Part shown: positions 137-64,000 of the stretch, piece by piece | Position numbering within the stretch: position 1 is the stretch's first letter | How the letters are laid out: each line of letters opens with the position of its first letter | DNA from: Octopus sinensis | Taxonomy: Eukaryota | DNA length: 64,000 nucleotides | Direction: 5' to 3' | Assembly: GCF_006345805.1 (NCBI RefSeq) | Contig: NC_042999.1 | Coordinates: forward strand, 50,902,001-50,966,000 | The notes under the pieces: generated by a model | The model's input: only the letters and a program-made list of their open reading frames with translations | Told to the model about the DNA's origin: nothing | Databases searched by the model: none | Position numbers and translations under genes: made by a program

Positions 137-712
137 ATGCCTACAAATATCCGAATATGTAAAAATTTTAAGAACAGTAAAAACATGGGCAAGAGAGGGG
201 TTTTTTTGTGTTAAAAGAAGCAGATAGGAGATAGAAAAATAAGAGAAGCTGCTGGAAATAAAGACACCTGGATTCTGTAGAAAACAAAAGGAAGATTATG
301 CAAAGTTGGAGGCAACCAAATTAGAAGAGAAACCAAAATTTCTGTTTACTAAGTGTTTGAAGATCAGATAAATATGTTTGCTTTCTTAATGATATTTATC
401 TTCATTTTTCAATCAATCAAATGAAATTTTTTAATGAAGAGCTATATCTGAACTATATCTGTATAACAAAAAAAATTATAATGTGGAATAAATCATTTTG
501 CTGTGAGGAAAAAGATAAGTCTATTATTTCACAGAGAATCCTTAATCTCTCTCATTCTCCCTCAGATAGAGAGTACTATCTAAAACCCTAAGGCCTCACT
601 TTCTCATGCTACTATAATTTGTCTCATTTTGGGAACTATTTAACTACTGCTTTCTGATGCTAACCATAATTGGTTTACTTAGATTTGCTTGCTCAGATTT
701 GACTATTTCATA

Positions 713-1380
713 CATCATCATCATCATCGTTTAACGTCTGTTTTCTGTGCTAGCACGGGTTGGACAGTTTGACCGGGGTCTGAGAAGCCAGGGGGCTGCA
801 CCAGGTTCCAGTCTGATCTGGCAGTGTTTCTACAGCTGGATGCCCTTCCTAACGCCAACGACTCCATGAGCGTAGTGGGTGCTTTTTACGTGCCTCCGGT
901 ACAGGTGCCAGGGGAGGCTGGCAGTGGTCACGATTGGTTGGTGCTTTTTACATGCCACCAGCACAGAAGCCAGTCAAGGTGGCGGTGGCATCAGCCACGT
1001 TCGAATGGTGCTTTTTACGTGCCACCGGCATAGGTATCACAACAACAACTTCCATTTGATATTTATTTTGATGCTGATGTACTTGACTCAATAGGTCTCC
1101 TCAAGCATAGCAGGTCATGTGCCACCAGCACAGAAGCCATTCAAGGCGGCGCTGGCATCAGCCACGTTCAGATGGTGCTTTTTACGTGCTGCTGGCACAG
1201 GTATTGTTACTACAATTTCCATTTGATATTTATTTTGATGTTGATGTACTTGACTCAATAGGTCTCCTCAAGCACAGCAGGTCACCTTATGATCCAAGGT
1301 AAGCACAGCAGGTTGTCCTGCAATCCAAGGTACTTTGGATGGGCTGGGGCTATGTGAAACTGGTGCAGGAAGCAGCCCGG
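713..1380 (-). mobile_element. RTE-type LINE 3' end (ORF end + hairpin-repeat 3' UTR + (GAT)n tail), with internal 167-bp tandem reiteration
   Basis: (CAT)n then TTTAACGTC...GGATGCCCTTCCTAACGCCAAC (reverse complement of the GGAAGGGCATCC RTE-type tail), followed by repeated GTGCCACCGGCAC units. ATAGGTCTCCTCAAGC occurs at 1091 and 1258. Confidence 0.8.
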
Positions 1381-1475
1381 GTTACATATGTTATATAAAT
1401 AAGTTATTGTAATCTGTGCCACAATCTTCATCATATAAAGACATTATGCAAATACAGCACAATGTGTGGTGTGGA

Positions 1476-1519: not shown

Positions 1520-1810
1520 CTATAAAGCTTCATCTATTCCATATTTGGTGGTCAATGTAGAAGCTAGGGATAGATGAGTGGTTGGTTAGAGCTGTACAAG
1601 CCATGTATAGGGATGCCATATTTAAGGTGAAGGTTAGCAATGAGTATCGCAATGAATTTAAGGTACAAGTAGGGGTTCACCAAGGATCAGTCTTCAGCCC
1701 ACGCTTGATCATCATAGTTCTCCAGGCAACAGCAGAGGAATTTAAAGGCAGACTGCTCCTAGGAGTTCCTCCATGTTGGTAACCTTGTTCTTATAGCTGA
1801 ATCACTATGA
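1520..1810 (+). mobile_element. RTE-clade LINE reverse transcriptase fragment (decayed)
   Basis: Translation KLGIDEWLVRAVQAMYRDA...VQVGVHQGSVFSPRLIIIVLQA then, after a frameshift, EFLHVGNLVLIAES. This corresponds to the RTE RT motifs GVHQGSVLSPLLF and (E)LLYADDLVLIAES. Confidence 0.9.
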
Positions 1811-1970
1811 TATATACTAGTGCAGACATGTAAGATAATTTATTATACACTAAACTAAAACATTTTTATATATTTTTATATACAGTTCTATATTTAAGAG
1901 ATGAGGAATTATGTGCAATAGTTACATTATTTACATTTGACGGATATTTGTCCTCATCTTGTTTGTTGTT

Positions 1971-2016
1971 AACACAATGTTTCGGCCGGTATACCCTCCA
2001 GCCTTCATCAGGTGTC
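1971..2016 (-). ncRNA. Minimal type-I hammerhead ribozyme motif
   Basis: GACAC-CUGAUGA-A-GGCUGG(AGGGUAUA)CCGGCC-GAA-ACAU-U-GUGUU. Stems I and II pair; the stem III palindrome ACGU has decayed to ACAU. Confidence 0.65.
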
Positions 2017-2074
2017 TTGGGGAAATTTCGAAAAATACCTTACGAATGAGAACCCAGATTCGAAATTTCCCCAA

Positions 2075-2120
2075 GACACCTGATGAAGGCTGGAGAGTAT
2101 ACCAGCTGAACCATTGTGTT
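2075..2120 (+). ncRNA. Minimal type-I hammerhead ribozyme motif (mutated core)
   Basis: GACAC-CUGAUGA-A-GGCUGG(AGAGUAUA)CCAGCU-GAAC-CAU-U-GUGUU; GAAA has changed to GAAC. Confidence 0.55.
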
Positions 2121-2287
2121 AACAACAAACAAGATGAGGATAAATATCTGTCAAATGTAAATAATGTATATTTTTACATGATGTTGGATGTGAAACAATC
2201 AGTATCCTATGGAAATCAAATGGTGAAAAAAATTATTCATCTCATACCTTCTGACTTTCTTTATGTATGTGTATTTGTGTGTGTGTG

Positions 2288-2440: not shown

Positions 2441-2902
2441 TTGGTAAAATAGAAAGATGAATAATCTTGTTGCAGATTAATCAAAAGTTTAACCGATACC
2501 TTGGTAGCAAAAATCACAGCAGAAGAAAGCACGGTTGGAGATAAAACCATTTGGTGTTGCAACCGTGCGTTGGTGCGGATAATTGAATTTTAATATTATT
2601 AGTGAATTGAAGAAATGGAGCCTCCTCGTTCAAATTGCTTTACTGCGCCTCTGTTCTGTTTTGTTCTGCCAACGGAATTCCTATTTTTTTCCTGAAGAGA
2701 AAGCCACAATATGGTATCCTTATTTAATCAAAATTTGGAAAATTGTGGCTTTTGAAACATGTGTAGAATGCAATAAAATGAATTCTGTTCAATCTTCGTT
2801 CAACTCCATTTCTTCAATTCACTAATAATATTATATATATATATATATATATGTATGTATACATATATATATATGTATGTATATATATATATATATATAT
2901 AT

Positions 2903-3284
2903 ACTCTTTTACTCTTTTACTTGTTTCAGTCATTTGACTGTGGCCATGCTGGAGCACCGCCTTTAGTCAAGCAAATCGACCCCAGGACTTATTCTTTGTA
3001 AGCCCAGTACTTATTCTATCAGTCTCTTTTTGCCGAACCGCTAAGTGACGGGGACGTAAACACACCAGCATCGGTTGTCAAGCAAGGCTAGGGGGACAAA
3101 CACACACACACATATATATATACATATATACGACAGGCTTCTTTCAGTTTCCGTCTACCAAATCCACTCACAAGGCATTGGTCGGCCCGGGGCTATAGTA
3201 GAAGACACTTGCCCAAGATGCCACGCTGTGGGACTGAACCCGGAACCATGTGGTTAATTAGCAAGCTACTTACCACACAGCCAC
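2903..3284 (-). mobile_element. Family A SINE, near full length
   Basis: Reverse complement: GTGGCTGTGTGGTAAG head, CTTGGGCAAGTGTCTTCTAC CORE-like block, internal (TA/TG)n, and tail GGCGGTGCTCCAGCATGGCC...GACTGAAACAAGTAAAAGAG. Confidence 0.9.
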
Positions 3285-3531
<247 letters not shown>

Positions 3532-6000: not shown

Positions 6001-6184
6001 CATATATATATATGTACATACATATAAATATATATACATATATATCATCATCATCATCATCATCATTTAACGTCCGCTTTCCATGCGCTGAGCTGATGAA
6101 TCTGGTGAGCTGATGAATCCCCGGAACTTTCCATGAGATCCTCGGAACTTTCCAGGAAATTTCCGGCCAATTTTCCAGGATAAA

Positions 6185-6987
6185 CCAGTCCACAGGGAAT
6201 TTCAATCCCAGAGCCTAAGTCTGTGAGGGACCTGGGTATCGACATGAGTGATGATACCTCTTTCCAAGTGCACATTACCAGAATGGCGACAAAGTGCAGA
6301 CGACTGGGGTGGATCCTAAGAACATTCAGAACCAGAGATAAGGAAACCATGATGGTCCTCTGGCGGACATTCGTCCTCACTCGGGTGGATTACTGCTCAC
6401 AGCTATGGTCACCCACCAGTGTAAAATTAACAGCAGACCTTGAAGCAATCCAGAGAAGATTCACAAAGAAGATCATCTCTTTGCAACAGCTCAGCTACTG
6501 GGAAAGGTTGAAACAGCTAAGACTCTACTCCCTGGAGAGAAGATGGTAGAGGTATGCAGTAATATATGTCTGGAAGATCCTGGCAGGAATTGTGCCAAAT
6601 TTTGGCATTGTAAGCTACACCAATGCTAGAACGGGACGACACTGCATAGTGCCAAAAATCCCAGCAATGCCATCACGCTTCAGGACCAGCTTCTGCAAGA
6701 GCCTGGGTTTCAAGGGCCCACAGCTTTTTAATATTCTCCCAAAGAGTCTGAGGAACTTGCACAAAGTAGATGTAGCGGTTTTTAAATCAAAGCTGGACAT
6801 CTTCCTGTCAAGAGTCCCAGATGAACCTACCTCACGGCAAGAGGTGCAAATGAGAGTAGCTGTATCAAACTCCATTCTTCACCAAGTGCCACATATTAGA
6901 CGAGGTCCGTCGTAATAACAGTGTAGCACAAAACGGCGGTGCATCAGCATGGCCACAGCTCTGAGCTGAAACTAGAAAAAAAAAAAA
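6185..6987 (+). mobile_element. CR1-group LINE, 5'-truncated (RT C-terminal region + 3' end + poly-A)
   Basis: VRDLGIDMSDD...GWILRTFRTRD...RVDYCSQLWSP...LEAIQRRFTK...SYWERLKQLRLYSLERRW*RYAVIYVWKIL...FKGPQLFNILP...FKSKLDIFLSRVPDEP. One premature stop; A-tail at 6975-6987. Confidence 0.9.
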
Positions 6988-10460: not shown

Positions 10461-10936
10461 AGGGGCAAAAAGTTAGGTTAATTTTCTTTGATGTTTTATC
10501 TAAATTAGCAGACATAATCTTAAACACGAAAAACAATGGTAGTATTACAAATAAAGAAATGGTTATTTTATAAAGAATTCTGATATAAAAACTTAATAAA
10601 AACATCAAATACATAAATATATAACCAGTAAATAGAAATTTTTGTGTAAGTCCAATGAAAATAAAGTGTATTAAATTGAATTGAAAATCCAGACTATATC
10701 TTATATATTCAATTTCTTACTGAATTCTACTAATACTTCTCAATCTATTTAACTTCTCCGAGGAGTTTCCTTTTGTCAGAATGTGAGTGCAATGAATTAC
10801 ATTTCAAGTCTACTTGAGTAAATTTTCTGACCCACTTTGCAACAAATAGAATTTTCATTATGTGAAACACATTGCAGAAGTACATTAAATGAAAACGCAG
10901 CTTCAGCATGTACTTCACAACAATTTTCTCATTCTT

Positions 10937-11255
10937 TCATCATCATCATCATCATAATCATCGTTGTCATCATCATCATCATCATCATCATCGTCATCAT
11001 CGTCATCGTCATCGTCATCATCATCTTCATTGTCATCATCATCATCATCGTCATCGTCATCATCGTCGTCGTCATCATCATCTTCATTGTCATCATCATC
11101 ATCATCATTGTCATCATCATCATCATCATTGTCATCATCGTCGTCGTCGTCGTCGTCATCATCATCGTCGTCGTTGTCATCGTTGTCATCATCATCATCG
11201 TCGTCGGCATCATCATCATCATCATCATTGTCGTCATCATCATTGTCATCATCAT
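10937..11255. repeat. ~320-bp (CAT/CGT/TGT)n trinucleotide tract, the expanded tail of the adjacent RTE-type element
   Basis: Direct reading; contiguous with TTTAATGTCTGTTTCCCATACCAGCATGGG. Confidence 0.9.
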
Positions 11256-11620
11256 TTAATGTCTGTTTCCCATACCAGCATGGGTTGGACAGCTTGACAG
11301 GAACTGATAAAGCCAGGGGCCTCACAAGGTGCCATATTCTGTTTTGGCTTGGTTTCTAGGCTGGATGCCCTTCCTGATGCCAACCACTCCACATAGTTTA
11401 CTGGGTGCTTTTTAAGTGGCACCAACACCAGTGCTTTTTATTTAACACCATCACCCACACCAATTCTTTTTAAATGGCACCTTGATTTTAGGATCACAAT
11501 TCTGCTGTGGTGGTCATGTCTTCTCGAGTACAGCAGTACACCACATTTCTTGGTCCTCTGTCATCTCCTTCATAAGGTTCAGTGTTTTATTGAGTTATTT
11601 TCCAAATATTGAAAAGCATT
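11256..11620 (-). mobile_element. RTE-type LINE 3' end, degenerate
   Basis: GGATGCCCTTCCTGATGCCAACC, GGTGCTTTTTAAGTGGCACC units and an ORF-end remnant CTTCTCGAGTACAGCA. Confidence 0.75.
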
Positions 11621-18138: not shown

Positions 18139-18189
<51 letters not shown>

Positions 18190-18195
<6 letters not shown>

Positions 18196-18220
18196 GAGAG
18201 AGAGAGGGAGACAGACAGAC

Positions 18221-18256
<36 letters not shown>

Positions 18257-19119
18257 ACATGTATGCATTTGTATTTGTGTATTTGTTTACATTGATGCCT
18301 CTAAATATCATGAACAACAAGCAGTGATGTTGTAGTCATTTCTTCTATTGACAAATCATTTGCTGGTTTTGCATCTTTGAAGATGTGTGAAATAAGAGAT
18401 TCTTTACTTGAAAAACCGGTACAGATTAGTGGCAGGAAGGCCATCTGGCTGCAAAATAATTTCTCAAAAACATGTCTGTCAAACCCTTGCTGACATGGAA
18501 AGATAAATGGAGGCAAAAACAATGGTTTGAATAGAAATATAAGCATATTAAAACAAGAGATTTTGTATTATAGATCAGAGCCAACTTTAGCCCAATGGCT
18601 GTCTTAATAGTAATTTAAATACAATATATTGGGGCCCCTACAACTACAACATTCACAAATTAGTATTGAGTCTCAAGACCATTGAGTCTCAAGACCATTG
18701 TCTCAAGACCTCAGGTAACTCGTCTGATTGCTTATGTCTTGATACAGTACTGCTTCAGGCAGGTTGGTATCAAACAGGTTAAATGAGAGAAAAAATGTTA
18801 GTTCCTTCTTTCCGTATCAAATTAGAACAAATATTGACATGTTTATAAAGATTTTCCTTCCTACATAAAATTGAATATTTGTGTAAACTTTGATTTATCT
18901 AACTAGAATATTGATTCATTTATTTTTCTTAAATCAGTAATATAATTTCATAAAAACCATTTCATGTAACTAAATAAATCAGATAAATTTGTTTTAGTAC
19001 ATGCATGAGTGTGTGAAGTGGTGTGCCAGTGTGTGAGTGGCATGTGTTTGTATGCATGTATATGTGCATTTGTGTAATATAGGTGAGTTTTATGCACCCA
19101 TGTGCATGCAGTCACACAG

Positions 19120-19184
<65 letters not shown>

Positions 19185-20097
19185 GAGAGAGAGAGGGAGA
19201 CAGACAGACAGATATATATATATATATATATATGGACATGTATGCATTTGTATTTGTGTATTTGTTTACATTGATGCCTCTAAATATCATGAACAACAAG
19301 CAATGATGTTGTAGTCATTTCTTCTATTGACAAATCATTTGCTGGTTTTGCATCTTTGAAGATGTGTGAAATAAGAGATTCTTTACTTGAAAAACCGGTA
19401 CAGATTAGTGGCAGGAAGGCCATCTGGCTGCAAAATAATTTCTCAAAAACATGTCTGTCAAACCCTTGCTGACATGGAAAGATAAATGGAGGCAAAAACA
19501 ATGGTTTGAATAGAAATATAAGCATATTAAAACAAGAGATTTTGTATTATAGATCAGAGCCAACTTTAGCCCAATGGCTGTCTTAATAGTAATTTAAATA
19601 CAATATATTGGGGCCCCTACAACTACAACATTCACAAATTAGTATTGAGTCTCAAGACCATTGAGTCTCAAGACCATTGTCTCAAGACCTCAGGTAACTC
19701 GTCTGATTGCTTATGTCTTGATACAGTACTGCTTCAGGCAGGTTGGTATCAAACAGGTTAAATGAGAGAAAAAATGTTAGTTCCTTCTTTCCGTATCAAA
19801 TTAGAACAAATATTGACATGTTTATAAAGATTTTCCTTCCTACATAAAATTGAATATTTGTGTAAACTTTGATTTATCTAACTAGAATATTGATTCATTT
19901 ATTTTTCTTAAATCAGTAATATAATTTCATAAAAACCATTTCATGTAACTAAATAAATCAGATAAATTTGTTTTAGTACATGCATGAGTGTGTGAAGTGG
20001 TGTGCCAGTGTGTGAGTGGCATGTGTTTGTATGCATGTATATGTGCATTTGTGTAATATAGGTGAGTTTTATGCACCCATGTGCATGCAGTCACACA

Positions 20098-20150
<53 letters not shown>
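18190..20150. repeat. Near-identical ~979-bp tandem duplication bounded by microsatellites
   Basis: GGACATGTATG at 18255 and 19234. Identical ORFs 18301-18546 and 19280-19525. I noticed one substitution (GCAGTG/GCAATG). Confidence 0.95.
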
Positions 20151-21767: not shown

Positions 21768-22169
21768 TACTCTTTTACTTGTTTCAATCATTTGACTGCA
21801 GCCATGCTGGAGCACCGCCTATAATCGAGCAACTCGACCCCAGGACTTATTCTTTTGTAAGCCTAGTACTTAATCTATCGGTCTCTTTTGCCGAACCACT
21901 AAGTAACGAGGACATAAACTCACCAGCATCGGTTGTCAAGCAATGCTAGGGGGACAAACACAAACACACAAACACACACACGCATATATATATATATACA
22001 TATATACGACGGGCTTCTTACAGTTTCCGTCTACCAAATTCACTCAACAAGGCTTTGGTTGGTCCGAGGCTATAGTAGAAGACACTTGCCCAAGGTGCCA
22101 CACAGTGGGACTGAACCCGGAACCATATGGTTGTTAAACAAGCTACTTACCACACAGCCACTCCTGCGC
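21768..22169 (-). mobile_element. Family A SINE, full length
   Basis: TACTCTTTTACTTGTTTCA ... ACCACACAGCCACTCCTGC. Confidence 0.9.
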
Positions 22170-22208
22170 TTATATGTATGTACATATATATATATGTATG
22201 TATGTACA

Positions 22209-23012: not shown

Positions 23013-23048
<36 letters not shown>

Positions 23049-23056
23049 GATATATA

Positions 23057-23464
23057 GGAGTGGCTGTGTGGTAAGTAGCTTGTTTGCCAACCACATGGTT
23101 CCGGGTTCAATCCTAATGCGTGGCACCGTGGGCAAGTGCCTTCTACTCTAGCCACAGGCTGACCAAAGTATTGTGAGTGGATTTGGTAGAAGGAAACAGA
23201 AAGAAGCCCGTCGTATATATGTATATATATATATGTGTGCGTGTGTGTTTGTGTGTCTGTGTTTGGCCCCCTAGCATTGCTTGACAACCGATGCTGGTGT
23301 GTTTATGTCCCCGTCACTTAGCGGTTCAGTAAAAGAGACCGATAGAATAAGTACTGGGCTTATAAAGAATAAGTCCCGGGGTCGAGTTGCTCAACTAAAG
23401 GCGGTGCTCCAGCATGGCCGCAGTGAAATGACTGAAACAAGTAAAAGAGTAAAGGAGTAAAAGA
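23057..23464 (+). mobile_element. Family A SINE, full length
   Basis: Head, CORE-like block, microsatellite and tail all present. Confidence 0.9.
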
Positions 23465-29699: not shown

Positions 29700-29900
29700 C
29701 ATGAGTGTAGTGGGTGCTTTTTACGTGCCACCCACACAGGTGCCAGATGGGGCTGGCAAACGGCCACAGACGGATGGTGCTTTTTACGTGCCACCGGCAC
29801 GGGGGCCAGGCGGGGCTGGCAATGGCCACGATCGGATGGTGCTTTTTATGTGCCACCGGCACGGGGGCCAGGCGAGGCTGGCAACGGCCACGAACGGATG
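29700..29900 (-). mobile_element. RTE-type 3' UTR hairpin-repeat block (three ~57-nt units)
   Basis: GGTGCTTTTTACGTGCCACC repeated three times with CCAGG...CTGGC. Confidence 0.85.
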
Positions 29901-29904
29901 TTTA

Positions 29905-30100
29905 TGTGTCTTTGTTTGTCCTCCAACATTGCTTGAGAACCGATGCTGGTGTGTTTGCATCCCCATAACTTAGCGGTTCAGCAAAAGAGACCGATAGAAT
30001 AAGTACTAGGCTTACAAAGAATAAGTCCTGGGGTCGATTTGCTCGACTAAAGGCGGTGCTCCAGCATGGCCGCAGTCAAATGACTGAAACAAGTAAAAGA
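29905..30100 (+). mobile_element. Family A SINE 3' half
   Basis: ACCGATGCTGGTG...GACTGAAACAAGTAAAAGAG. Confidence 0.9.
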
Positions 30101-35410: not shown

Positions 35411-37161
35411 TATATGTTGGTGTGTACCCTTGTTTTAATACCATTTGATGACTATAAACAATCACTGCCATACAAGCAATGATGTTCGCTTCCAGTTTTC
35501 CACGAAGAACACACCTAGCAATGTGTGTTATTACCTTACTTGGAAACAAGTGAAGGTTGGTGACAGAAAAGGCATCCATCAGTAAAAACACTGCATCTAC
35601 AAATTCCATTGAAACATGATGATGATGATGACGATAATGATGATAATGACAATGAGAAATACCTTGAAGCTAGCATTTCCAGCATAACTTCAGCCACAAT
35701 CGCTCTAGCCAACTAAAGAGCTTGCCTATGTAGTTTGTTAAAACTCAAAATCACGATCTTGTGATCATTGATCTTGTGAAATTGAATCCTAAAAACAATC
35801 TCATTTTTATTTCATAATCACTGCAATTACCATCATCAGCATCTATTTTGTTTCCTTTTTCTATGATTGCATCAAGTAGTTTTAAAAATTATATTCCTTT
35901 GAGTTTTTTTTTTTTTTCTTCTCTTGTTTATACATTTATTTATTCATTTTTCTTCTCTGCCAATCCATTCTTTAGTACAGGTCATCTCACTGCAGATAAT
36001 TTTTCTTGTCTAGGTTTGCTCTCAAAACAATTTAATAATATTTTTTTTTAAATAAATGTTTATATGTTTATATAAATAAACTTTTTGAATTATTTCAATC
36101 ATACAAATTACCTTGTGAAAAAAAAAAAAATGAAAATATTGTTTGTTTTGTTTTCTCAAAAAAATCTCTGTGATATTGAAATTGTGTGCATTTTGAAGAA
36201 TATATTGATTTGGTTCAATGATTATGGTAGATGGCAGACACAGGAATTAAAATTACTGAAATGTTGCAGGGAAAATATATATATATGTATACATATTTCT
36301 GAGTGTTCATTGACATCAGGTTATATTTCTGAATTGATGCAAATCAATGTTATTTTGAATCTAAATTACTTCCAAAAGTATTTTAAAAGAAGTTTTACAC
36401 TTAAAGAATGTAAAAATTAGAAGTGTTTTTTAAAGTGATAAAATTTAAAAAGTTGAAATGAAGATTCAAATAATTTATAGATTAAAATAGAAATATATAA
36501 ATAATATAAATAATATTTTGAATAAGGTTTCTGATTAGAACCAAAAAAACAAAACATCCCTATCAGTAATTATTAATGCTATTTTCAATAGCTGATTTTT
36601 GCCAAAAATTTTAGCTATATTTTCTTTTAATCAATAAGAAAACTCAAATTCTGTCCCATTTGGTATTTCCTTATCAGTTACCAGTTGTTGTTAATCAAGA
36701 AGTTGTATGGTATATTTAGTATCTTGTTGCAAAAGTAATAATTCACAAATTATCTACAAATATATGTGTGTATATGTTGAGTATCTTTTATGTTTTAATT
36801 AGTATTTAGTAAAGTTCATAGAAGAGTAAGGAGTGAAGAATTTAATGTCATGGAGCTCTGATTCTTTGTATGTTACTGAGGAAAAGAGACAGAAAGGGAT
36901 TATCCCTTGGATTGTGGACAAATAAAATTGTACTTTGTAGTATGTGAGATATTTTATCCTGAATTCAAATCTTACCATGATCAGCTTCACTTTCCATTGT
37001 CACAGGGTCAAGGAAATAAGTACTACTTAAGTATTCAGGTTACTCTAATTTATTGTAGCCTACCTCAAAAACTGATTTGTGGTAGTCTTGTGTCCATATT
37101 AAAAATTCTCGTTACTTTGAGTAAAACATAATTGTGCTGTTTTAACCAGAGTATAATGGTG

Positions 37162-37164
<3 letters not shown>

Positions 37165-37204
<40 letters not shown>

Positions 37205-37745
37205 CCATCATTTAATGTTCGCTTTCCATGCTAGCATAGGTTGGATGATTTGACTGAGGACTGGCGAACCAGATGGCTGTACCAGGCTCCAATCTGATCT
37301 GGCAGAGATTCTACAGCTGGATGCCCTTCCTAACGCCAACAACTCCGAGAGTGTAGTGGGTGCTTTTACGTGCCACTCAGGCGATACTGGCAACGGCCAT
37401 GCTCAAATGATGAAGAGCCAGTCCAGTGGAACTGGTAATGACCTCGCTCTAATGTATTTTTCACACACCAGTAAGGCAACGCTGGTAACGATCACGCTTG
37501 AATGGTGCTTTTTACGTGCCACCGGCATGGAAGCCAGTTAGCTGCTTTGGCAACAATCATGCTCAGACAGTGCTCTTAGCACGGATGTCAGTCATTGAAC
37601 TTGATTTTGATTTCACTTGACTCAAGCAGAGTTTAGTGTCCAATGAAGGAAAGGTATGCATAAATGGGCTGGTTACACCCCTTGCATAGGCCATGAGGTT
37701 ATGGTCTCACTTGGCTTGCCGGGTCTTTTCAAGCACAGCATATTT
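37165..37745 (-). mobile_element. RTE-type LINE 3' end including the ORF C-terminus
   Basis: Reverse complement begins AAATATGCTGTGCTTGAAAAGACCCGGCAAGCCAAGTGA = KYAVLEKTRQAK*, then the 3' UTR hairpin units, GGAAGGGCATCC and a (GAT)n tail. Confidence 0.85.
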
Positions 37746-38240
37746 TGAGAAAAAAGCATCTTATGTCATTTTGAGCTAAGTATCATTGTATTATTCTAAG
37801 CTGAGTATCCTTTTATCATTTTGAGCTAAGCATTATTATGCCATTTTAAGATGAGCGTATTATGTTATTTTGGGCTGAGAATCACTGAGCTATTTTGAAT
37901 TGAGCATCTCCATGCTATTTTGCACTGAACAACATTGTGCTGTTTTGAGCTGAGCATTGATTGTGCTGTTTTGAGCCGAGCATTGATTCTGCTGTTTTGA
38001 GCTGAGCATAAATTGTACCATTTTGAGCTCAGCACATATTGTGCTATTTTGAGCTGAACATAAAGTGCACCATTTTGAGCTGAGTATCAATTATATTATT
38101 TTGAACTAAGCATAAATTGTGCCATTTTGAACTCAGTATCATCAATTATATTTTGAACTAAGTATAAATTATGCCATATTGAGCTGAGCATCAATTGTAT
38201 CATTTTGAGCTGAGCATCCTTGTGTCATTTTTAGTTGAGT
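37741..38240. repeat. Diverged ~25-bp minisatellite, roughly 20 units
   Basis: Conserved core ATTTTGAGCTGAGCAT followed by a variable ~9-11 nt (e.g. AAATTGTGCC, TGATTGTGCTG). Confidence 0.9.
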
Positions 38241-39311
38241 ATTCTCATGACATTTTCAATCTACTGGAATTCTTTTATGTTGTTCCCATTATCTATAAAA
38301 CTCTAAATCCTACAACTCAAAATTCTCTCCACTCCACACACACTATAATGAGATACTCTGAGTCTAATTTAGAAACTATCCTGAGAAAATGGAATCATTT
38401 TAGTACGCATAAACAGCAAAAGTACTTTATGGAGAAATGTGCAAATTCTAACAACATTTCCTTATTTCCAGCATCCGTATAATATTTCACAACTACCACA
38501 GAACAAATTATCGACAATCAATGACCTGTGAATTACGAGTTTAAATGCAAATTATTCTCACTTGTCATATACTGAGATTAATCAGATTAATTAAGATTAA
38601 ATCTGTGAGCTGTTAAATAAGAGATAAAACCTGAATTTCTCTTCGGTAACTTCTTAAGAGCAAAGATTTAATACCTTACCAAATGAACTTTGAAATTTTC
38701 ATACATTTTGCAGAATGGCATCAAGTGTTGTATGAAGAACAGGTTTTTCAGGAAATCTTGCACAAAATTTTTCAGTGAATGATTTTAGGAACACACACAC
38801 ACACACATATGCACATTCAATTTATTTGTTCCAAAAAGATCTGGATATTAGTTTCTTTAAGAGGTATAACACTTCGTTGAGTTGTTAGAGCATCAAATGA
38901 AAAGCTGTGCAGTGTCTTTCCTGGTGCTTGACATCCTGAGTTCAAATCCTGTGAAGGTCAAGTTTGCCTTTCATTCCTTCAGTCTCAGTAAATATAGTAG
39001 CAATCTCAGGTGGAGGGTCGGCTGGCAGAAATGTTAAAAGTATTGAGAAGGATTCCTTGTCATATTTCATCTTTTATCCTTTACTTTGTTTCAGTCGTCG
39101 GACTGTGGCTATTATGGGGCACCACCTTGAAGAATTTTGGTTGAATGAATTGACCCTAGTACCCATTTTTTTAAAGCTTGATACTTATTCAATCAGTCTC
39201 TTTTGTCAAACTGCTAAGTTACTGGGATGTAAACACACCAACACTGGTTGTCAAGCAGTGGAGGGGGACAAACACAGACACAAAGACACACATACATATA
39301 TATACATATAT

Positions 39312-39716: not shown

Positions 39717-40091
39717 GTATTAATAAAATAGATGGAAAAAAAAGATTTTATTTAGCACGACACATGTTTGGGTCTTTTCGGGTATATAAATAAATAAAGA
39801 AAATAAAAAGTCTCACTAAAGATTCGGTTTTATGTTATTGCCAAATGTCCATCAACTTTGGAAATGAGTAAAAAACAGAATTTTCACGTTCATATTTGAA
39901 TTTTTCACGTTTCAACTTTTCTGTTTTTTACTAATTCCCAAAGTTGATGGACATTTGGCGATAACGTAAAACCGAATCGCTAGTGAGACTTTTTAGTTTT
40001 TATTTATTTATGTACCCGAAGAGACCTAGAATAGGTTGAAACATGTGTTGCACTAATAACAATCTATATTTTTCCATCTATTATATTAATA
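39717..40091. mobile_element. Penelope-like inverted-repeat element (~165-bp arms) with hammerhead motif
   Basis: 39717-39880 is the reverse complement of 39919-40091. The right arm carries GUAC-CCGAAGA-GACCU(AGAAU)AGGUU-GAA-ACAUGUGU-U (40012-40053); the left arm lost part of stem II but keeps the GUC triplet. Confidence 0.8.
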
Positions 40092-40178: not shown

Positions 40179-40589
40179 CTTTTACTCTTTTACTTGTTTC
40201 AGTCATTTGACTGCAGCCATGCTGGAGCACCACCTTTAATCGAGCAAATCGACCCTGGGACTTATTCTTTGTAAGCCCAGTACTTATTCTATCGGTCTCT
40301 TTTGCCGAACCGCTAAGTGATGGGGACGTAAACACACCAGCATCGGTTGTCAAGCAATGCTAGGAGGACAAACACAGACATACAAACACACACAAACATA
40401 CACATACATATATATATGCATATATACGACAGGCTTCTTTCAGTTTCTGTCTACCAAATCCACTCACAAGGCATTGGTCGGCCCAGGGCTATAGCAGAAG
40501 ACACTTGCCCAAGATGTAACGTAGTGGGACTGAACCCAGAACCATGTGGTTGGTTAGCAAGCTACTTATCACACAGCCACTCCTGTGCC
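40179..40589 (-). mobile_element. Family A SINE, full length
   Basis: Reverse complement of head, core and tail. Confidence 0.9.
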
Positions 40590-40950
40590 TATCCACTTAT
40601 ACTTTTTGTATAATTTCTCCATTATATATGTATATATATATATATATATATCGTATATACACACAATGGGCTTCTTTCAGTTTCCACCTACCAAAACCAC
40701 TCGCAAAGGCTTTGTCAGCCCAAGGCTATACAAGATACTTTCCCAAGATGTTGTTTAGTGGGACTGAACTTGGAACCATGTGGTTGGGAAGCAAGCTTCT
40801 TACTGCACATCCACACCTGCACTTTATGTATAATTTTGTATAAAGTATAAATATAAAAAATATATTTTATGTAGTTCAAATATTATCCATTATAAAACTC
40901 AAGTTGTGAAGAGTTAAGGGCAAAACTCAGAATAGACATATATTGTATAT

Positions 40951-49874: not shown

Positions 49875-50260
<386 letters not shown>

Positions 50261-50269
50261 GCCATTATG

Positions 50270-50448
50270 GACTGCTGAAATCTACAAGTTTTATTCATTT
50301 TCTCCCTGTTTATTTTCTCCTATTCCTTTCTGTTGAAGAACGTAGGCTTGAAACATAAAAGACTTTACCATTTTTCCCAAGTGTCAAACTAATACACTTG
50401 TTTGTTGTTCATACACCTGTCTTTGTCTTTTGCTTTTCTATAAATTTC

Positions 50449-50452
<4 letters not shown>
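50270..50452 (+). mobile_element. Second copy of the 48685 hammerhead-like repeat
   Basis: CUUU-CUGUUGA-A-GAAC(GUAG)GCUU-GAAACAU-A-AAAGAC; downstream TAATACACTTGTTTGTTG also shared. Confidence 0.65.
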
Positions 50453-50497
<45 letters not shown>

Positions 50498-50504
<7 letters not shown>

Positions 50505-52390
50505 CACATAAAAAGTAGTCAGTACCGCTTGTGGTACCAGTGCCGGTGGCACACAAGAATCCATCCGAACATGGCCGTAGTCAGTACCGCATCACTGGCC
50601 ATCGTGCTGTGGGCACATAACAAACACCATCCGGTCATGGCCGTTCGCCAGCCTCATCTAGCACCTGTGTCGGTGGCACATAAAAACACCATCCGAAGAC
50701 CCGGCAAGACTAGTCAGGCCATAAACCATGGCCCCTACCTGGGACGTAGTCAGTCCACCTGTGCATACCTTCCTCCTTGTGATACTTGTGAAGGCCTGTT
50801 GAGGCAAGTGAAAATCAAAATCAAAATCAAAATCAAAACAAATCAAAATAGATGAACATCAATGGAATTTGTATCTTTGTGGTACCAGTGCCGGTGGCAC
50901 ACAAGAGAAAACCATCCGAAAGTGGCCGTAGCCAGTACCGCATCGACTGGCCTCCGTGCTGTGGGCACATCCGAAAGTGGCCGTAGCCAGTACCGCATCG
51001 ACTGGCCTCCGTGCTGTGGGCACATGACAAACACCATCCGATCGTGGCCGTTCGCCAGCCTCATCTAGCACCTGTGTCGGTGGCACATAAAAACACCATC
51101 CGAAGACCCGGCAAGACTAGTCAGGCCATAACCCATGGCCCCTACCTGGGACGTAGTCAGTCCACCTGTGCATACCTTCCTTCTTGTGACACTTGTGAAG
51201 ACCTGTTGAGGCAAGTGAAAATCAAAAATCAAAATCAAAATCAAAACAAATCAAAATAGATGAACATCAATGGAATCTGTATCTTTGTGGTACCAATGCC
51301 GGTGGCACACATGAGAACCATCCGAACGTGGCTGTAGCCAGTTCCGCATCGACCGGCCTCCGTGCTGTGGGCACGTAACAAACACCATCCGATCATGGCC
51401 GTTCGCCAGCCTCATCTGGCACCTGTGTCGGTGGCACATAAAAACACCTTCTGAAGACCCGGCAAGACTAGTCAGTCCACCTGTGCATACCTTCCTTCTT
51501 GTGACACTTGTGAAGACCGGTTGAGGCAAGTGAAAATCAAATCAAATCAAATCAAATCAAATCAAAATCAAAATAGACAAAATAGATGAACATCAATGGA
51601 ATTTGTATCTTGTGGTACCAGTGCCTGTGGCACACAAGAATCCATCAGTGCTGTAGTCAGTGCGGTGGGCACATGACAAACACCATCCGATCGTGGCCGT
51701 TCGCCAGCCTCATCTAGCACCTGTGTCGGTGGTGGCACATAAAAACACCATCCGAAGACCCGGCAAGACTAGTCAGGCCATAACCCATGGCCCCTACCTG
51801 GGACGTAGTCAGTCCACCTGTGCATACCTTCCTTCTTGTGACACTTGTGAAGACCTGTTGAGGCAAGTGAAAATCAATTCAAAACAAATCAAAATAGATG
51901 AACATCAATGGAATTTGTATCTTTGTGGTACCAGTGCCGGTGGCACGTGGCACACAATAAAACCATCCGAACGTGGCTGTAGCCAGTACCGCATTGACTG
52001 GCCTCCGTGCTGTGGGCACGTAACAAGCACCATCCGATCGTGGCCGTTTGCCAGCCTCATCTGGCACCTGTGTCGGTGGCACATAAAAACACCATCCGAG
52101 CGTGGCCGTCTGCCAGCCTCGTCTGGCACCTGTGTCGGTGGCACATAAAAAACACCATCCGAGCGTGGCCGTTTGCCAGCCTCGTCTGGCACCTGTGTCG
52201 GTGGCACATAAAATCACCCACTACACTCTCGGAGTGGTTGGCGTTAGGAAGGGCATCCAGCTGTAGAAACACTGCCAGATCTGACTGGACTGGTGCAGCT
52301 TTCGGGCTCCCCAGACCCCAGTTGAACCGTCCAACCCATGCTAGCATGGAAAGCGGACGTTAAATGATGATGATGATGATGATGATGATA
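50498..52390 (+). mobile_element. Concatemer of an RTE-type 3' UTR (one truncated plus four macro-units) ending in one normal tail
   Basis: GAAGACCCGGCAAG (ORF-end sequence) at 50695, 51102, 51453 and 51754. Each unit has (AAATC)n and GTGCCGGTGGCAC hairpin units. There is a single terminal GGAAGGGCATCC...(GAT)n. Confidence 0.9.
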
Positions 52391-52496
52391 TATATATATA
52401 TAAACATACAGAGAGAGAGAGATTAAATAGATATATATATACACACACATACATATATATGTATGTATGAATATATATAATAATAATATAAATATA

Positions 52497-52880
52497 CTAG
52501 CAGTATCGCCCGGCGTTGCTCGGGTTTGTAAGGGAAATAACTATAAAGCATTTTTAGATAGTTATAGCCAAAATATAGCAAAAAAAATGGGAAAAAAATG
52601 ATGGTAAATTTTTTTGAGAGTTAAAAAGGTGGAGTTGCGTCCCCTAGACAGTCTGTGATTTGTGTTTCTGATTCTCGACCACATGTCGAATTCATCGATT
52701 TTTTTCAGAACTGGGGGAACTTTTCAAAATTTTCGCTGCGTTAGTTTTGAATTATGACATTGGGCTATGTGTGTGTCAAGTTTCATCAGAATCGGTTGAA
52801 AGCCGTGGTCAGAGTGAGGGTACAACCAAACAGACACACAGAAACACACACAGACAAACTGCCGTTTATATAGAGAGAGA
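52497..52880 (-). mobile_element. Non-autonomous Helitron
   Basis: Reverse complement: A|TCTCTCTCTATATAAAC ... CCCGAGCAACGCCGGG hairpin + CGATACTGCTAG|T. Confidence 0.88.
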
Positions 52881-54797: not shown

Positions 54798-55001
54798 ATA
54801 TATGTGTGTGTCTTTGTGTTTACATTTGTTTCTCCACACTCATCTGACATTGGTTTATTTACATCCCCATAAGCTAGCAGTTCATCAAAAGAGACCAATA
54901 GAACAAGTTCCTGAATTAAAAATAAGAATTAGACTTTATTCATTTGACTAAACCCTTCAATGCAGTGCTACTTTTTGTTGCCTCTTATTTACAGCTAACT
55001 C

Positions 55002-55421
55002 TCTTTTACTCTTTTACTTGTTTCATTCATTTGACTGCGGCCATGCTGGAGCACCTCCTTTAGTCAAGCAAATCAACCCCAGGACTTATTCTTTGTAAGC
55101 CTAGTACTAATTCTATTGGTCTCTTTTGCTGAACTGCTAAGTTACAGGGGCATAAACACATCAGCATCGGTTGTCGAGCGATGTTGGGTGGAAGACAAAC
55201 ATAGACACACAAACAACACACACATATACATATATATGTGTGTATATATATATATATACGATGAGTTTCTTTCAGTTTCCATCTACCAAATCCACTCACA
55301 AGGCTTTGGTCACCCCGAGGCTATAGTAGAAGACACTTGCCCAAGGTGCCACGCAGTGGGACTGAACCTGGAACCATGTGGTTGGTAAGCAAGCTACTTA
55401 CCACACAGCCACTACTGTGCC
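55002..55421 (-). mobile_element. Family A SINE, full length
   Basis: Reverse complement of head, core and tail. Confidence 0.9.
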
Positions 55422-55752
55422 TAAGTGGACTGAGCCATTAAAAGTAAAGGAAGTTAACCAGTCAATTGCACTATACTAAGTTATGATATACTTAATCTGT
55501 AGCCTGGATTAACACCACCATTTATAGGAACAGGCATGGCTTTATATCTAAAAAGTTCATGTCACAACCATGTATTGCTGGGTTCAATCCTACTGAGCAG
55601 CACTTTGAGTGTCTTTTACTGAAGTACTGAACCAAACAACCAAACAAATGCAAGAAGCATATCATATGTGTGTGTGTGCATGCATACGTGCATGTGTGAA
55701 TGTTGATATTCAACACTTGTCACCACTTGGGTGAAGCAATGCTACATTCTTA

Positions 55753-57508: not shown

Positions 57509-57983
57509 GGCGTAGGAGTGGCTGTGTATAGGTGTAGGAGTGGCTGTGTATAGGTGTAGGAGTGGCTGTGTATAGGTGTAGGAGTGGCTGTGTGGTAAGT
57601 AGCTTGCTTACCAACCACATGGTTCTGGGTTCAGTCCCACTGCGTGGCACATTGGGCAAGGGTCTTCTACTATAGCCTTGGGCCAACCAAAGCCTTGTGA
57701 GTGGATTTGGTAGACGGAAACTGAAAGAAGCCTGTCATATATATGTATATATATGTATGTGTGTGTGTGTATATGTTTGTGTGTCTGTGTTTATCCCCCC
57801 CCCCAAACATGGCTTGTCAACTGATGCTGTTGTGTTTACGTCCCTGTAACTTAGCGGTTCAGTAAAAGAGACCAATAGAATAAGTACTAGGCTTCAAAAG
57901 AATAAGTCTTGGGGTCGATTTGCTCGACTAAAGGCGGTGCTCCAGCATGGCCACAGTCAAATGATTGAAACAAGTAAAAGAGA
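57507..57983 (+). mobile_element. Family A SINE with 4x tandem 22-bp 5' end
   Basis: GGAGTGGCTG at 57515, 57537, 57559 and 57581. Confidence 0.92.
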
Positions 57984-58366
57984 TATATTTTCGCTTTCTA
58001 ATTTCTTGGAGTGGAATTTGAACTCAGAACATAAAGACAGACAAAATGCCACTAATCATTTTGGCCAGCTCACTGCCTTAAAATTTGTAGATATTGCACC
58101 CTAAACATTAGGAACACTAATCGAATTAACAACTCATGTAAAGCATTTAGATATTTATCATAAGGAAAGTGTTATTATTTTATCTTTCTTCTTTTACTTG
58201 TAGCCATTTTGGGGGCATCACCTTCAAGAATTTTTAGTTGAATGAATCAACCTCAATACTAATTTTTTAAAGCCTGGTATATATTCTGTTGATCACATTT
58301 GCCAAACCACTAAGTTATGGGGACCGGTTGTCAAGCAGTGGTAGAGAGAAACACAGCTACAAAGAT

Positions 58367-62850: not shown

Positions 62851-63058
62851 TTAAACAAAACCCATCCTAATTATGAAAATGTGTGTAAAACTATAGCACT
62901 TGAAAATATTTAACAAATAGAAAATTCAAAAAGACAAATCTAATCATCTGTAAACCTCCTAACTATGCAAGTAAACAATACATTTAAACTTCTAATTACA
63001 AAAAGCCACAAAATAATTTATTAACTTTCTGTTAATGCTTCTTCAATAGAAAGGCACA

Positions 63059-63470
63059 GGAGTGACTGCATGGTAAATAGCCTGCTTACCAACCACATGG
63101 TTCTAGGTTCAGTCCCACTGCATGGCACCTTGGGCAAGTGTCTTCTACTAAAGCCTCAGGCTGACCAAAGCCTTGTGAGTGAATTTGGTAGACGGAAAGT
63201 GAAAGAAGCTTGTCATATATATGTATATGTATATATATATGTGCGTGTGTATGTGTTTATGTGTCTGTGCTTGTCCCCCTCCCCCAACATCGCTTGACAA
63301 CCGATGCTGGTGTGTTTACGTCCCCGTAACTTAGCGGTTCAGCAAAAGAGACTGATAGAATAAATACTAGGCTTACAAAAGAATAAGTCCTGGGGTCGAT
63401 TTGCTCGACTAAAGGCGGTGCTCCAGCATGGCCGCAGTCAAATGACTGAAACAAGTAAAAGAGTGAAAGA
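63059..63470 (+). mobile_element. Family A SINE, full length
   Basis: GGAGTGACTGCATGGTAAA ... GACTGAAACAAGTAAAAGAG. Confidence 0.9.
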
Positions 63471-64000
63471 GAACTTGGAACATAAAAGCACAGGTTTGTA
63501 TTGTGAACATTGAGTTTGTAAACAAACCCCAGTGACTCTCAGAAAACACAGAATCAAAGACAAAGTATCCAGTTTTTCTTGTTTTGTTTTTTTGTTTTGT
63601 TTTTTTTGTTTTGTTTTTTGATACCACAAGATAGTTGTTTTTTACTTTGATCCTGTGTGTCAAGAGTAGTTTGAATTTGTTAAATTAATCTTCTTCAGAA
63701 AAATAAATTTTTGTATTTCTTTTACTTTTACCTGTTTCAGTCATTAGATCGCAGCCATGCTGGAGCAATGCCTTGAAGGATTTCAGTCAAATGAATCAAT
63801 GCCAGTACTTATTTCTTTAAGCCTGGTACTTATTCAATTGGTTCCTTTTGCTAAACTGCTAAGTTACAAGGATATAAAAGTACCAACACAAACTGTCAAG
63901 CAATGGTGGAAAACAAACACACACACACAAACACAAACACACACACACAAACACACACACACACAAACACACACACACACGCACACACAGGTTTGACAAA

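What the first reader, a model, noticed from the sequence alone, without database searches (positions are those of the whole stretch)
50498..52390. Higher-order concatemer of an RTE 3' UTR with one shared junction: possible rolling-circle or template-jumping retrotransposition
Seen: the segment from the RTE ORF end (GAAGACCCGGCAAG, identifiable as EKTRQ from the intact copy at 37.7 kb) through (AAATC)n and several hairpin units to CACCATCC is repeated at 50695, 51102, 51453 and 51754 (spacings 407/351/301 bp). A truncated unit precedes them, and there is only one terminal tail. Three junctions read CACCATCC|GAAGAC and the fourth is the same breakpoint with substitutions; units differ by internal deletions. 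Inference: a single jump or circularisation was then copied repeatedly. Candidate routes are reverse transcription around a circular RNA (conceptually like retrozymes, but here with no ribozyme I can identify) or later unequal crossover.
Basis: partly seen in the sequence, partly recalled or inferred. Interest (0 to 1): 0.75.

Follow-up and report, generated by a model that had tools for sequence, protein, structure and literature searches.

The report
Self-concatenated short retroposon array
One insertion of a very common short retroposon (octopus-like genome) carries its front part 4.5 times in tandem, every copy joined at the same point; this is an ordinary transposon-to-tandem-repeat case, with one notable detail: each repeat starts at the element's own 5' end.

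Summary
Window 50499-52389 holds a truncated unit plus four units (407/351/301/344 bp). They share one junction, CACCATCC|GAAGACCCGG: three exact, one with two substitutions. One tail domain and one (ATG)n follow.

Two parts of the interpretation fail. The 37.7-kb copy is not an intact RTE. It is a ~560-bp element with no ORF upstream, inserted in a minisatellite, and its homology to the array starts at AAGACCCGGCAAG. So the unit's left end is the recurrent 5' terminus of a short non-autonomous retroposon, not a shown ORF end. No ribozyme or hammerhead core is present, so the retrozyme or circular-RNA route has no support.

Units differ by 4-8%, with excess CpG transitions. A 210-column substitution-free block spans the junction at a two-unit offset (P = 0.0004). 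One derived base is shared by non-adjacent units. A perfect 55-bp duplication lies inside U1. These point to stepwise DNA-level exchange, not one burst.

Best reading: one founding head-to-internal junction, probably a reverse-transcriptase template jump, then amplification by unequal exchange. A second family copy (700-1385) has its own 167-bp duplication with a different junction.

No genome-wide census was possible. This is a new member of a known kind; interest is low to moderate.

The parts
50452..50498 (.). (TA)23.5 tract abutting the left end of the array; probable target site
   Evidence: TA runs of 10 bp or more cover only 2.8% of the window.
50499..50694 (+). U0: left-truncated, rearranged unit (modules H1-H2-H3 only) ending in CACCATCC
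50695..51101 (+). U1, 407 bp: head, (AAATC)n, H1, H2 (with a perfect 55-bp tandem duplication at 50913-51025), H3
51102..51452 (+). U2, 351 bp; its 3' end carries the two substitutions (CACCTTCT)
51453..51753 (+). U3, 301 bp: 36-bp deletion between TAGTCAG repeats, deletion in H2, longer (AAATC)n, 3-bp GGT insertion
51754..52097 (+). U4, 344 bp: the last full unit, which continues into the unrepeated 3' part
52098..52214 (+). Modules H4 and H5 (about 63 and 54 nt), present once, not part of the higher-order unit
52215..52363 (+). Single 3' tail domain (CACCCACTACAC...GTTAAATG). It is shared with about 12 other copies in the window.
52364..52389 (+). (ATG)8.7 terminal simple repeat
52388..52402 (.). 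(AT)n directly after the tail: right-hand part of the TA target
37164..37727 (-). Independent monomeric copy of a related subfamily. Its 5' end coincides with the array's unit start within 0-2 nt. It is inserted in a minisatellite.
708..1385 (-). Third head-bearing copy (divergent subfamily) with its own 167-bp internal tandem duplication (1283-1117 and 1116-~950, 10% diverged) and a different junction, GGCACA(TGAC)CTGC

Best explanation
The 1.9-kb segment is a single insertion, into a (TA)n tract, of an abundant short non-autonomous retroposon. The element consists of a ~190-nt head including (AAATC)n, then ~62-nt tandem modules, a ~150-nt tail domain and (ATG)n. It is mobilised LINE-style. 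Its front part (head plus modules H1-H3) is present 4.5 times. Every internal junction joins the end of module H3 (...CACCATCCGAA) to the element's own 5' terminus (GACCCGGCAAG...), with 0-2 nt of overlap. I infer one founding 'head-to-internal' junction made by the retrotransposition machinery. Most likely the reverse transcriptase reached the 5' end of one element RNA and continued on an internal module of a second RNA, that is, a template jump. This happened either during this insertion or in a progenitor copy. The unit was then multiplied and partly homogenised at DNA level by unequal exchange and gene conversion, including a two-unit (652-bp) register event. Small slippage events followed (55-bp duplication, microsatellite changes, deletions between short repeats). 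Shown: the anatomy, the single junction, the coincidence with a 5' terminus, the non-star unit relationships and the absence of ribozymes. Inferred: the template jump and the DNA-level amplification.
For: Single shared junction, absent elsewhere in the window. The local alignment of a unit with the independent 37.7-kb copy starts exactly at AAGACCCGGCAAG. That copy has unrelated minisatellite DNA on both sides, so the unit's left end is a recurrent element terminus. The c1k copy starts AACCCGGGC at the equivalent position. All other copies are 5'-truncated at varied points and end in (ATG)n, the LINE-type insertion pattern. Units differ by 4-8%, with 19 of 27 changes being transitions and 7 of 27 CpG transitions, which indicates decay in place. 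Divergence is not uniform. Aligning U1U2 with U3U4 gives 26 substitutions in 622 columns but a 210-column clean block across the junction (51016-51239 against 51665-51877), with permutation P = 0.0004. A 147-bp exact repeat lies at offset 652. H3 of U1 and U3 are identical, while other H3 pairs differ at 3-5 sites. A derived non-CpG G>A change (alignment column 387) is shared by U0, U1 and U3 but not by U2, U4, H4 or H5. A perfect 55-bp duplication inside U1 shows recent local slippage. Non-LTR reverse transcriptases are documented to jump from a finished cDNA to further RNA molecules and to give head-to-tail repeats in cells (PMC11371274). Template switching is the accepted route for module exchange in mollusc SINEs (PMC4758252).
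Against: The 5'-terminus argument rests on one clean independent copy plus one weak one; no further heads exist in the window. The left-most unit is truncated and abuts (TA)n directly. So at least 1.5 units, and possibly the whole array, were already present at insertion, which would move amplification to the RNA or master-copy level. The clean-block statistic assumes uniform mutability. A more conservative test (0 differences in H3 against a mean of ~4.2) gives only P~0.015. Documented template jumps land on the 3' end of the acceptor RNA, not on an internal site. No genome-wide count of the junction could be made.
Confidence: 0.42

Rival explanations
1. The whole multimer was made at RNA level. 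Either serial template jumps occurred within one target-primed reverse transcription event (for example onto element RNAs that end at ...CACCATCCGAA), or the locus is an ordinary 5'-truncated copy of a master element that already carries the multimer. Differences between units were then inherited from the templates rather than acquired here.
For: The left-most unit is truncated in LINE fashion and abuts (TA)n, while (AT)n follows the tail. The array therefore looks like one insertion with its original ends. Unit starts equal the RNA 5' terminus. Serial template jumping and head-to-tail products are documented for R2 proteins (PMC11371274). Another family member (c1k) also carries an internal duplication, so duplicated subfamilies may exist.
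Against: Four identical internal acceptor sites need a special RNA species for which there is no evidence. The clean 210-column block spanning a junction and the perfect 55-bp duplication are more simply explained by local DNA events. The CpG-biased differences look like decay in place. No second locus with the junction was found in 64 kb.
Confidence: 0.25
2. Purely DNA-level origin. A microhomology-mediated tandem duplication (replication slippage or template switching at a fork) arose within a monomeric insertion and was then expanded by unequal crossover. The match between the breakpoint and the element's 5' end is a coincidence.
For: The junction has only 0-2 nt of microhomology. The family has intrinsic ~62-nt tandem modules, which favour misalignment. 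c1k shows a comparable duplication with breakpoints that are internal on both sides and a 4-nt microhomology. There is recent 55-bp slippage in U1.
Against: The left breakpoint falls within 0-2 nt of an independently observed element terminus. The chance is about 1-3% if breakpoints are random within the head. A further deletion would be needed to truncate U0 while leaving (TA)n adjacent.
Confidence: 0.15
3. Nested insertion followed by collapse. A full-length copy inserted into an older 5'-truncated copy just after module H3. Recombination between the two adjacent H4-H5-tail segments then removed the new tail, leaving head-to-H3. Unequal exchange amplified the unit.
For: It explains why the junction uses a true 5' terminus. 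The family is very dense, with about 13 copies in 64 kb, so nesting is likely. Insertion-driven tandem formation is documented in Drosophila (PMC5932611).
Against: No tail, (ATG)n or target-site duplication remains at any junction. The GC-rich module is unlike the TA-rich sites this family usually occupies. More steps are needed.
Confidence: 0.12
4. Rolling-circle reverse transcription of a circular RNA (retrozyme-like), or rolling-circle replication of an extrachromosomal DNA circle followed by reintegration.
For: Identical junctions in head-to-tail units are what a circle would give. Tandem retrozymes exist in molluscs (PMC7229834).
Against: No ribozyme family matched at E<=10 on either strand and there is no CUGANGA...GAAA core in the units. 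The array ends in modules, a tail and (ATG)n that lie outside the unit, so a linear template is needed as well. Units are not uniform, and their relationships are hierarchical or mosaic. The insertion looks like an ordinary LINE-type event in a TA tract.
Confidence: 0.03
5. Assembly artefact: the repeat was mis-expanded by the assembler.
For: Tandem repeats are prone to assembly error, and no reads are available here.
Against: Units differ by 4-8% and by several unit-specific indels. That is not what spurious expansion of a single unit gives.
Confidence: 0.03

Closest known systems
Transposon-derived tandem arrays or nascent satellites (McGurk & Barbash 2018, PMC5932611; review PMC6947457)
   Same: Head-to-tail units of a transposable element with one inherited junction, then expansion and homogenisation by unequal exchange. 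The element has intrinsic repeats that offer a substrate.
   Different: Non-LTR tandems in Drosophila are mostly 'tail-to-internal', meaning an intact 3' end joined to a truncated 5' end by double insertion. Here the junction is 'internal-to-head': no tail or target site lies between units, and the 5' end is complete.
End-to-end template jumping by non-LTR reverse transcriptases (R2; PMC11371274)
   Same: cDNA synthesis continues from the 5' end of one RNA onto another RNA and gives head-to-tail concatemers. Little or no homology is needed.
   Different: Documented jumps land on the 3' end of the acceptor. Here the acceptor point is ~290 nt upstream of the element's 3' end. The enzyme concerned is unknown and no test was possible.
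Dimeric or multimeric and modular SINEs built by template switching (PMC4758252; dimeric SINE PMC13023118)
   Same: A short non-autonomous retroposon whose parts are rearranged or duplicated, presumably by template switching of the LINE reverse transcriptase. It has a simple-repeat tail and variable modules.
   Different: No pol III-type head was detected. It is not known whether the multimer is a propagating family or a single locus.
Metazoan retrozymes (PMC7229834)
   Same: Short tandem units of a non-autonomous retroelement in an invertebrate genome.
   Different: The defining hammerhead ribozyme is absent. The array has a LINE-type tail and simple-repeat end outside the repeated unit.
VNTR regions inside composite retroposons (e.g. 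human SVA; from my own knowledge)
   Same: An internal tandem region of a retroposon whose copy number changes by slippage or unequal exchange.
   Different: Here the repeated unit includes the element's own 5' terminus and a microsatellite, and is 300-400 bp rather than 35-50 bp.

Membership tests
3' UTR of an RTE-clade LINE | Contiguity with an RTE ORF (endonuclease plus reverse transcriptase) upstream of the segment | tested here: not met
   No ORF lies upstream of any of the three head-bearing copies. c37k is bounded by minisatellite DNA. Window ORFs of 130 aa or more are all low-complexity or repeat read-throughs.
3' UTR of an RTE-clade LINE | 3' end made of a short simple repeat instead of poly(A) | tested here: met
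   (ATG)n ends the array and most copies. Microsatellites are described as common in RTE elements (PMC9115989).
3' UTR of an RTE-clade LINE | The partner LINE shares this tail domain | not testable with these tools
   No octopus-type LINE sequences could be reached: protein searches returned nothing and no DNA hits were found in any collection.
LINE-mobilised non-autonomous retroposon (SINE in the broad sense) | Defined 5' terminus, short length, LINE-type tail, dispersed 5'-truncated copies | tested here: met
   c37k and the array units start at the same nucleotide within 0-2 nt. The monomer is ~560-680 bp. About 13 dispersed copies are truncated at varied points. The terminus rests on few copies.
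SINE in the strict sense | Head derived from tRNA, 5S, 7SL or snRNA with a pol III promoter | tested here: not met
   ARAGORN found nothing in the window. Rfam at E<=10 gave no small-RNA match in the array.
Retrozyme / circular-RNA retroelement | Self-cleaving ribozyme (hammerhead) in each unit | tested here: not met
   No ribozyme family matched at E<=10 on either strand. No CUGANGA...GAAA core was found.
Retrozyme / circular-RNA retroelement | Unit-length circular RNA | not testable with these tools
   No RNA data are available.
Transposon-derived tandem array evolving by unequal exchange | Head-to-tail units sharing one junction | tested here: met
Transposon-derived tandem array evolving by unequal exchange | Non-star, mosaic similarity among units (higher-order register, conversion tracts) | tested here: met
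   A 210-column clean block at a two-unit offset, P = 0.0004. A derived base is shared by non-adjacent units. Mutability differences between regions weaken the test.
Transposon-derived tandem array evolving by unequal exchange | Copy-number polymorphism between haplotypes or individuals | not testable with these tools
   Only one sequence of the locus is available.
Double-insertion tandem (McGurk & Barbash) | [quoted passage not shown] | tested here: not met
   Junctions read H3|head with no tail, (ATG)n or flank between them.
End-to-end template-jump concatemer | The junction joins the 5' end of one template to the 3' end of the next | tested here: inconclusive
   The 5' end condition is met. 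The acceptor is internal to the canonical element, unless 3'-truncated RNAs exist, which could not be tested.

The most novel reading that the evidence does not exclude
The array records serial template jumping in vivo by a LINE reverse transcriptase. After finishing one element RNA, the enzyme repeatedly resumed on a defined internal module of further element RNAs (or on a ribozyme-free circular or 3'-processed RNA species). A retroposon would then turn into a tandem array in a single retrotransposition event, or the result would be a new, propagating multimeric retroposon family. This would be a direct RNA-level route from retroposon to satellite DNA in cephalopods.
Probability: 0.15. Interest if true: 0.6.

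Novelty: new member of a known kind. Interest (0 to 1): 0.3.

Why it matters
Tandem arrays derived from transposons are thought to seed new satellite DNA, and how the first dimer forms is the least understood step. Here the repeat boundary coincides with the element's own 5' end, which points to the retrotransposition machinery as the maker of that first junction. If a genome-wide census showed the same junction at many loci, the family would be a natural example of a self-concatenating retroposon. If the junction is unique, the locus is an ordinary local minisatellite inside a transposon.

Tried and rejected
1. Ribozymes: an Rfam scan of 50200-52700 at E<=10 gave only (TA)n-driven microRNA-like noise, and no hammerhead core was found. 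The retrozyme reading was rejected.
2. RNA structure: the monomer RNA folds no better than shuffled sequence, and the modules show only tiny stems without covariation. There is no evidence for a structure that brings the two breakpoints together.
3. Coding: ORFs of 141-167 aa run across the junction, but they have no homologues, no Pfam match and no record as called genes.
4. Junction census outside the window: the metagenome scan gave 25 loci, all chance 18-22-nt matches. Viral contigs and GTDB genomes gave nothing for the junction, head or tail. These collections do not hold the source genome, so absence there is uninformative.
5. Reaching an RTE partner through an RT-like fragment at 1561-1779: the protein search found nothing and Pfam found nothing.
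6. Further heads in the window: nhmmer found none beyond the array, c37k and c1k.
7. tRNA-type head: none. The bacterial promoter/terminator scan is irrelevant here.
8. Double insertion with a retained tail: rejected from the junction sequence.
9. Star-like single burst followed by independent decay: rejected because of the shared derived base and the clean block.

Full report
OBSERVATION. The 23-mer GAAGACCCGGCAAGACTAGTCAG occurs exactly at 50695, 51102, 51453 and 51754, giving spacings of 407/351/301. The junction 18-mer CACCATCCGAAGACCCGG occurs exactly at 50687, 51094 and 51746, and with two substitutions at 51445. It occurs nowhere else in the 64 kb, and none is expected by chance. A truncated unit (U0, 50499-50694) precedes four full units: U1 50695-51101, U2 51102-51452, U3 51453-51753 and U4 51754-52097. 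After U4 come two further ~62-nt modules (H4 and H5, 52098-52214), one tail domain (52215-52363) and (ATG)8.7. Units differ by indels. U3 has a 36-bp deletion between two TAGTCAG repeats and a deletion in H2. U1 has a perfect 55-bp tandem duplication. The (AAATC)n length varies.

WHAT THE ELEMENT IS. The tail domain recurs about 13 times in the window on both strands. It is usually 5'-truncated at different points and ends in (ATG)n, which is the LINE-type insertion pattern. The body upstream of the tail is a variable number of ~62-nt tandem modules with consensus G..CGTGGCCGTTGCCAGCCTCG.CTGGCACC.GTGCCGGTGGCACATAAAAAGCACCATCC. These 'hairpins' are only 3-6-bp stems with almost no covariation. 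A monomer RNA folds no better than shuffled sequence (z = +0.93). The interspersed repeats look like those of an octopus; this rests on my own recognition of the SINEs, not on a test.

THE 37.7-KB COPY. It is not an intact RTE. No ORF of 100 aa or more lies there on the relevant strand. The proposed EKTRQ frame meets a stop 12 codons upstream. The copy (37164-37727, minus strand) is a ~560-bp monomer. Its local alignment with an array unit begins exactly at AAGACCCGGCAAG. Upstream of that point, and again downstream of its (ATG)n, lies the same ~25-30-bp 'gctcaaaat' minisatellite, so the copy is a discrete insertion with a defined 5' end. A third head-bearing copy (708-1385, minus strand, divergent subfamily) starts AACCCGGGC at the equivalent distance from the conserved head core. 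nhmmer finds no further heads. No tRNA-like or other small-RNA head was detected. The family is therefore best described as a short, LINE-dependent, non-autonomous retroposon. Whether its partner belongs to the RTE clade could not be tested; only the simple-repeat tail fits (PMC9115989).

THE JUNCTION. Read with this knowledge, each junction is [module H3 ...CACCATCCGAA][GACCCGGCAAG... element 5' terminus]. The AA is assignable to either side, because modules H1 and H2 continue ...CCATCCGAA. The array is thus a 'head-to-internal' concatemer. Four complete 5' ends are each attached ~290 nt upstream of where a normal element would end, and no tail, (ATG)n or target sequence lies between units. 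If breakpoints were random, the chance that the right-hand one falls within about 2 nt of an independently observed terminus is roughly 1-3%.

RELATIONSHIPS AMONG UNITS. Pairwise substitution differences are 5-8% for the full units. Of 27 biallelic sites, 19 are transitions and 7 are CpG transitions, against ~8% of positions lying in CpG. This is typical of decay in place. The pattern is not star-like. A non-CpG G>A change (alignment column 387) is shared by U0, U1 and U3, while U2, U4, H4, H5 and other family copies keep G. U0 and U3 share several further variants. Aligning U1U2 with U3U4 gives 26 substitutions in 622 columns (4.2%). However, a 210-column block without any substitution spans the junction (51016-51239 against 51665-51877). 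Permutation gives P = 0.0004 under uniform mutability. The longest exact repeat is 147 bp at offset 652. H3 of U1 and U3 are identical, whereas other H3 pairs differ at 3-5 sites; taken alone that gives about P = 0.015. Together with the perfect 55-bp duplication, these features indicate several separate DNA-level events, including exchange in a two-unit register. They do not fit one burst of identical units followed by independent decay.

FLANKS. The array's left end abuts (TA)23.5 and its (ATG)n is followed by (AT)n. TA runs cover 2.8% of the window, and about half of the family's copies have (TA)n directly after their tail. The array therefore looks like one insertion in a TA tract with its original ends. 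Because the left-most unit is truncated, at least one junction probably existed when the insertion was made. That places the founding junction in the retrotransposition event or in a progenitor copy. A later deletion with one end in the unstable TA tract cannot be excluded.

CIRCLES AND RIBOZYMES. Rfam at E<=10 on both strands gives no ribozyme of any class. There is no hammerhead core. A circle consisting of the unit alone could not supply H4, H5, the tail or (ATG)n.

A SECOND CASE. The copy at 708-1385 has its own 167-bp tandem duplication, 10% diverged. Its junction is different, with breakpoints internal on both sides and a 4-nt microhomology (TGAC). So two of three head-bearing copies in 64 kb carry higher-order duplications. 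The region is duplication-prone, and only the array uses the 5' terminus as a breakpoint.

OUTSIDE THE WINDOW. None of the collections I could search holds the source genome. The 25 metagenome matches to the junction are chance 18-22-mers. Junction, head and tail patterns are absent from viral and prokaryotic genome collections. Protein-based routes returned nothing.

MECHANISM. I favour one founding head-to-internal junction made when the reverse transcriptase reached the 5' end of one RNA and resumed on an internal module of another. Non-LTR enzymes do jump between templates and give head-to-tail products (PMC11371274). Template switching is the accepted source of modular SINE rearrangements in molluscs (PMC4758252). 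DNA-level unequal exchange and conversion would then have amplified the unit (confidence ~0.42). The rivals are an entirely RNA-level multimer or a multimeric master copy (~0.25), a purely DNA-level origin with a coincidental breakpoint (~0.15), nested insertion followed by collapse of the duplicated 3' part (~0.12), and rolling circle or assembly artefact (~0.03 each).

COMPARISON AND VERDICT. The locus belongs to the known class of transposon-derived tandem arrays (PMC5932611). It differs from the usual non-LTR 'tail-to-internal' tandems because its junction is internal-to-head. It is not a retrozyme (PMC7229834), since the defining ribozyme is absent. Interest is low to moderate. It would rise if the junction proves to be dispersed across the genome.

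Noticed in passing
window 708-1385 (-): A divergent copy of the same retroposon superfamily carries an independent 167-bp internal tandem duplication (units 1283-1117 and 1116-~950, 10% diverged). Its junction is GGCACA(TGAC)CTGC, different from the array's.
   Followed up: yes
window 18139-20127: Two tandem copies of a ~990-bp segment at 98.8% identity (megablast self-comparison). Identical 88-aa stop-free stretches lie at 18304-18567 and 19283-19546.
   Followed up: no
window ~37740-38270 and 37100-37160: A minisatellite of ~25-30-bp 'gctcagctcaaaatggcacaat' units. The 37.7-kb retroposon copy sits inside it, and the repeat continues on the other side of the insertion.
   Followed up: partly
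window, e.g. 2902-3324, 21768-22205, 23016-23459, 40179-40596, 55000-55422, 57568-57987, 63049-63472: A ~410-bp SINE-like repeat is present in at least 12 copies at 80-92% identity, on both strands. It is far more uniform in length than the family studied here.
   Followed up: no
window 1923-2168 and 39785-40014: Two long near-perfect inverted repeats: 110-nt arms at 95% complementarity, and 96-nt arms at 85%. They are MITE-like or foldback structures.
   Followed up: partly
3' flanks of copies at ~6040, 28460, 29385, 48197, 52389, 61956: In about half of the family's copies, (TA)n or TA-rich sequence follows the terminal (ATG)n directly. This is either a target preference or a microsatellite born at the tail.
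   Followed up: partly
window 10840-11260: The tail of the copy at ~11231-11434 (-) runs into a ~400-bp imperfect GAT/GAC trinucleotide tract, giving long poly-Asp, poly-Ile and poly-Ser ORFs.
   Followed up: no
window 49887-50255: A compound microsatellite, (TTCG)13-(GTGG)30-(GATA)53, lies just upstream of the array, separated from it by ~200 bp and the (TA)n tract.
   Followed up: no
window 1561-1779 (+) and 6184-6912 (+): Stop-free stretches that look by eye like a reverse-transcriptase fragment (…GVHQGSVFSP…) and the C-terminal part of a LINE ORF. Neither reached a Pfam hit, and the protein search with the first found nothing. They are not linked to the array family's tails.
   Followed up: partly
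window 29703-29909 (-): A copy with three 62-nt modules whose tail is cut off after CACCCACTACACTCATGGA and replaced by (TGTAAATAA)n-like sequence. It is a 3'-truncated or rearranged family member.
   Followed up: no
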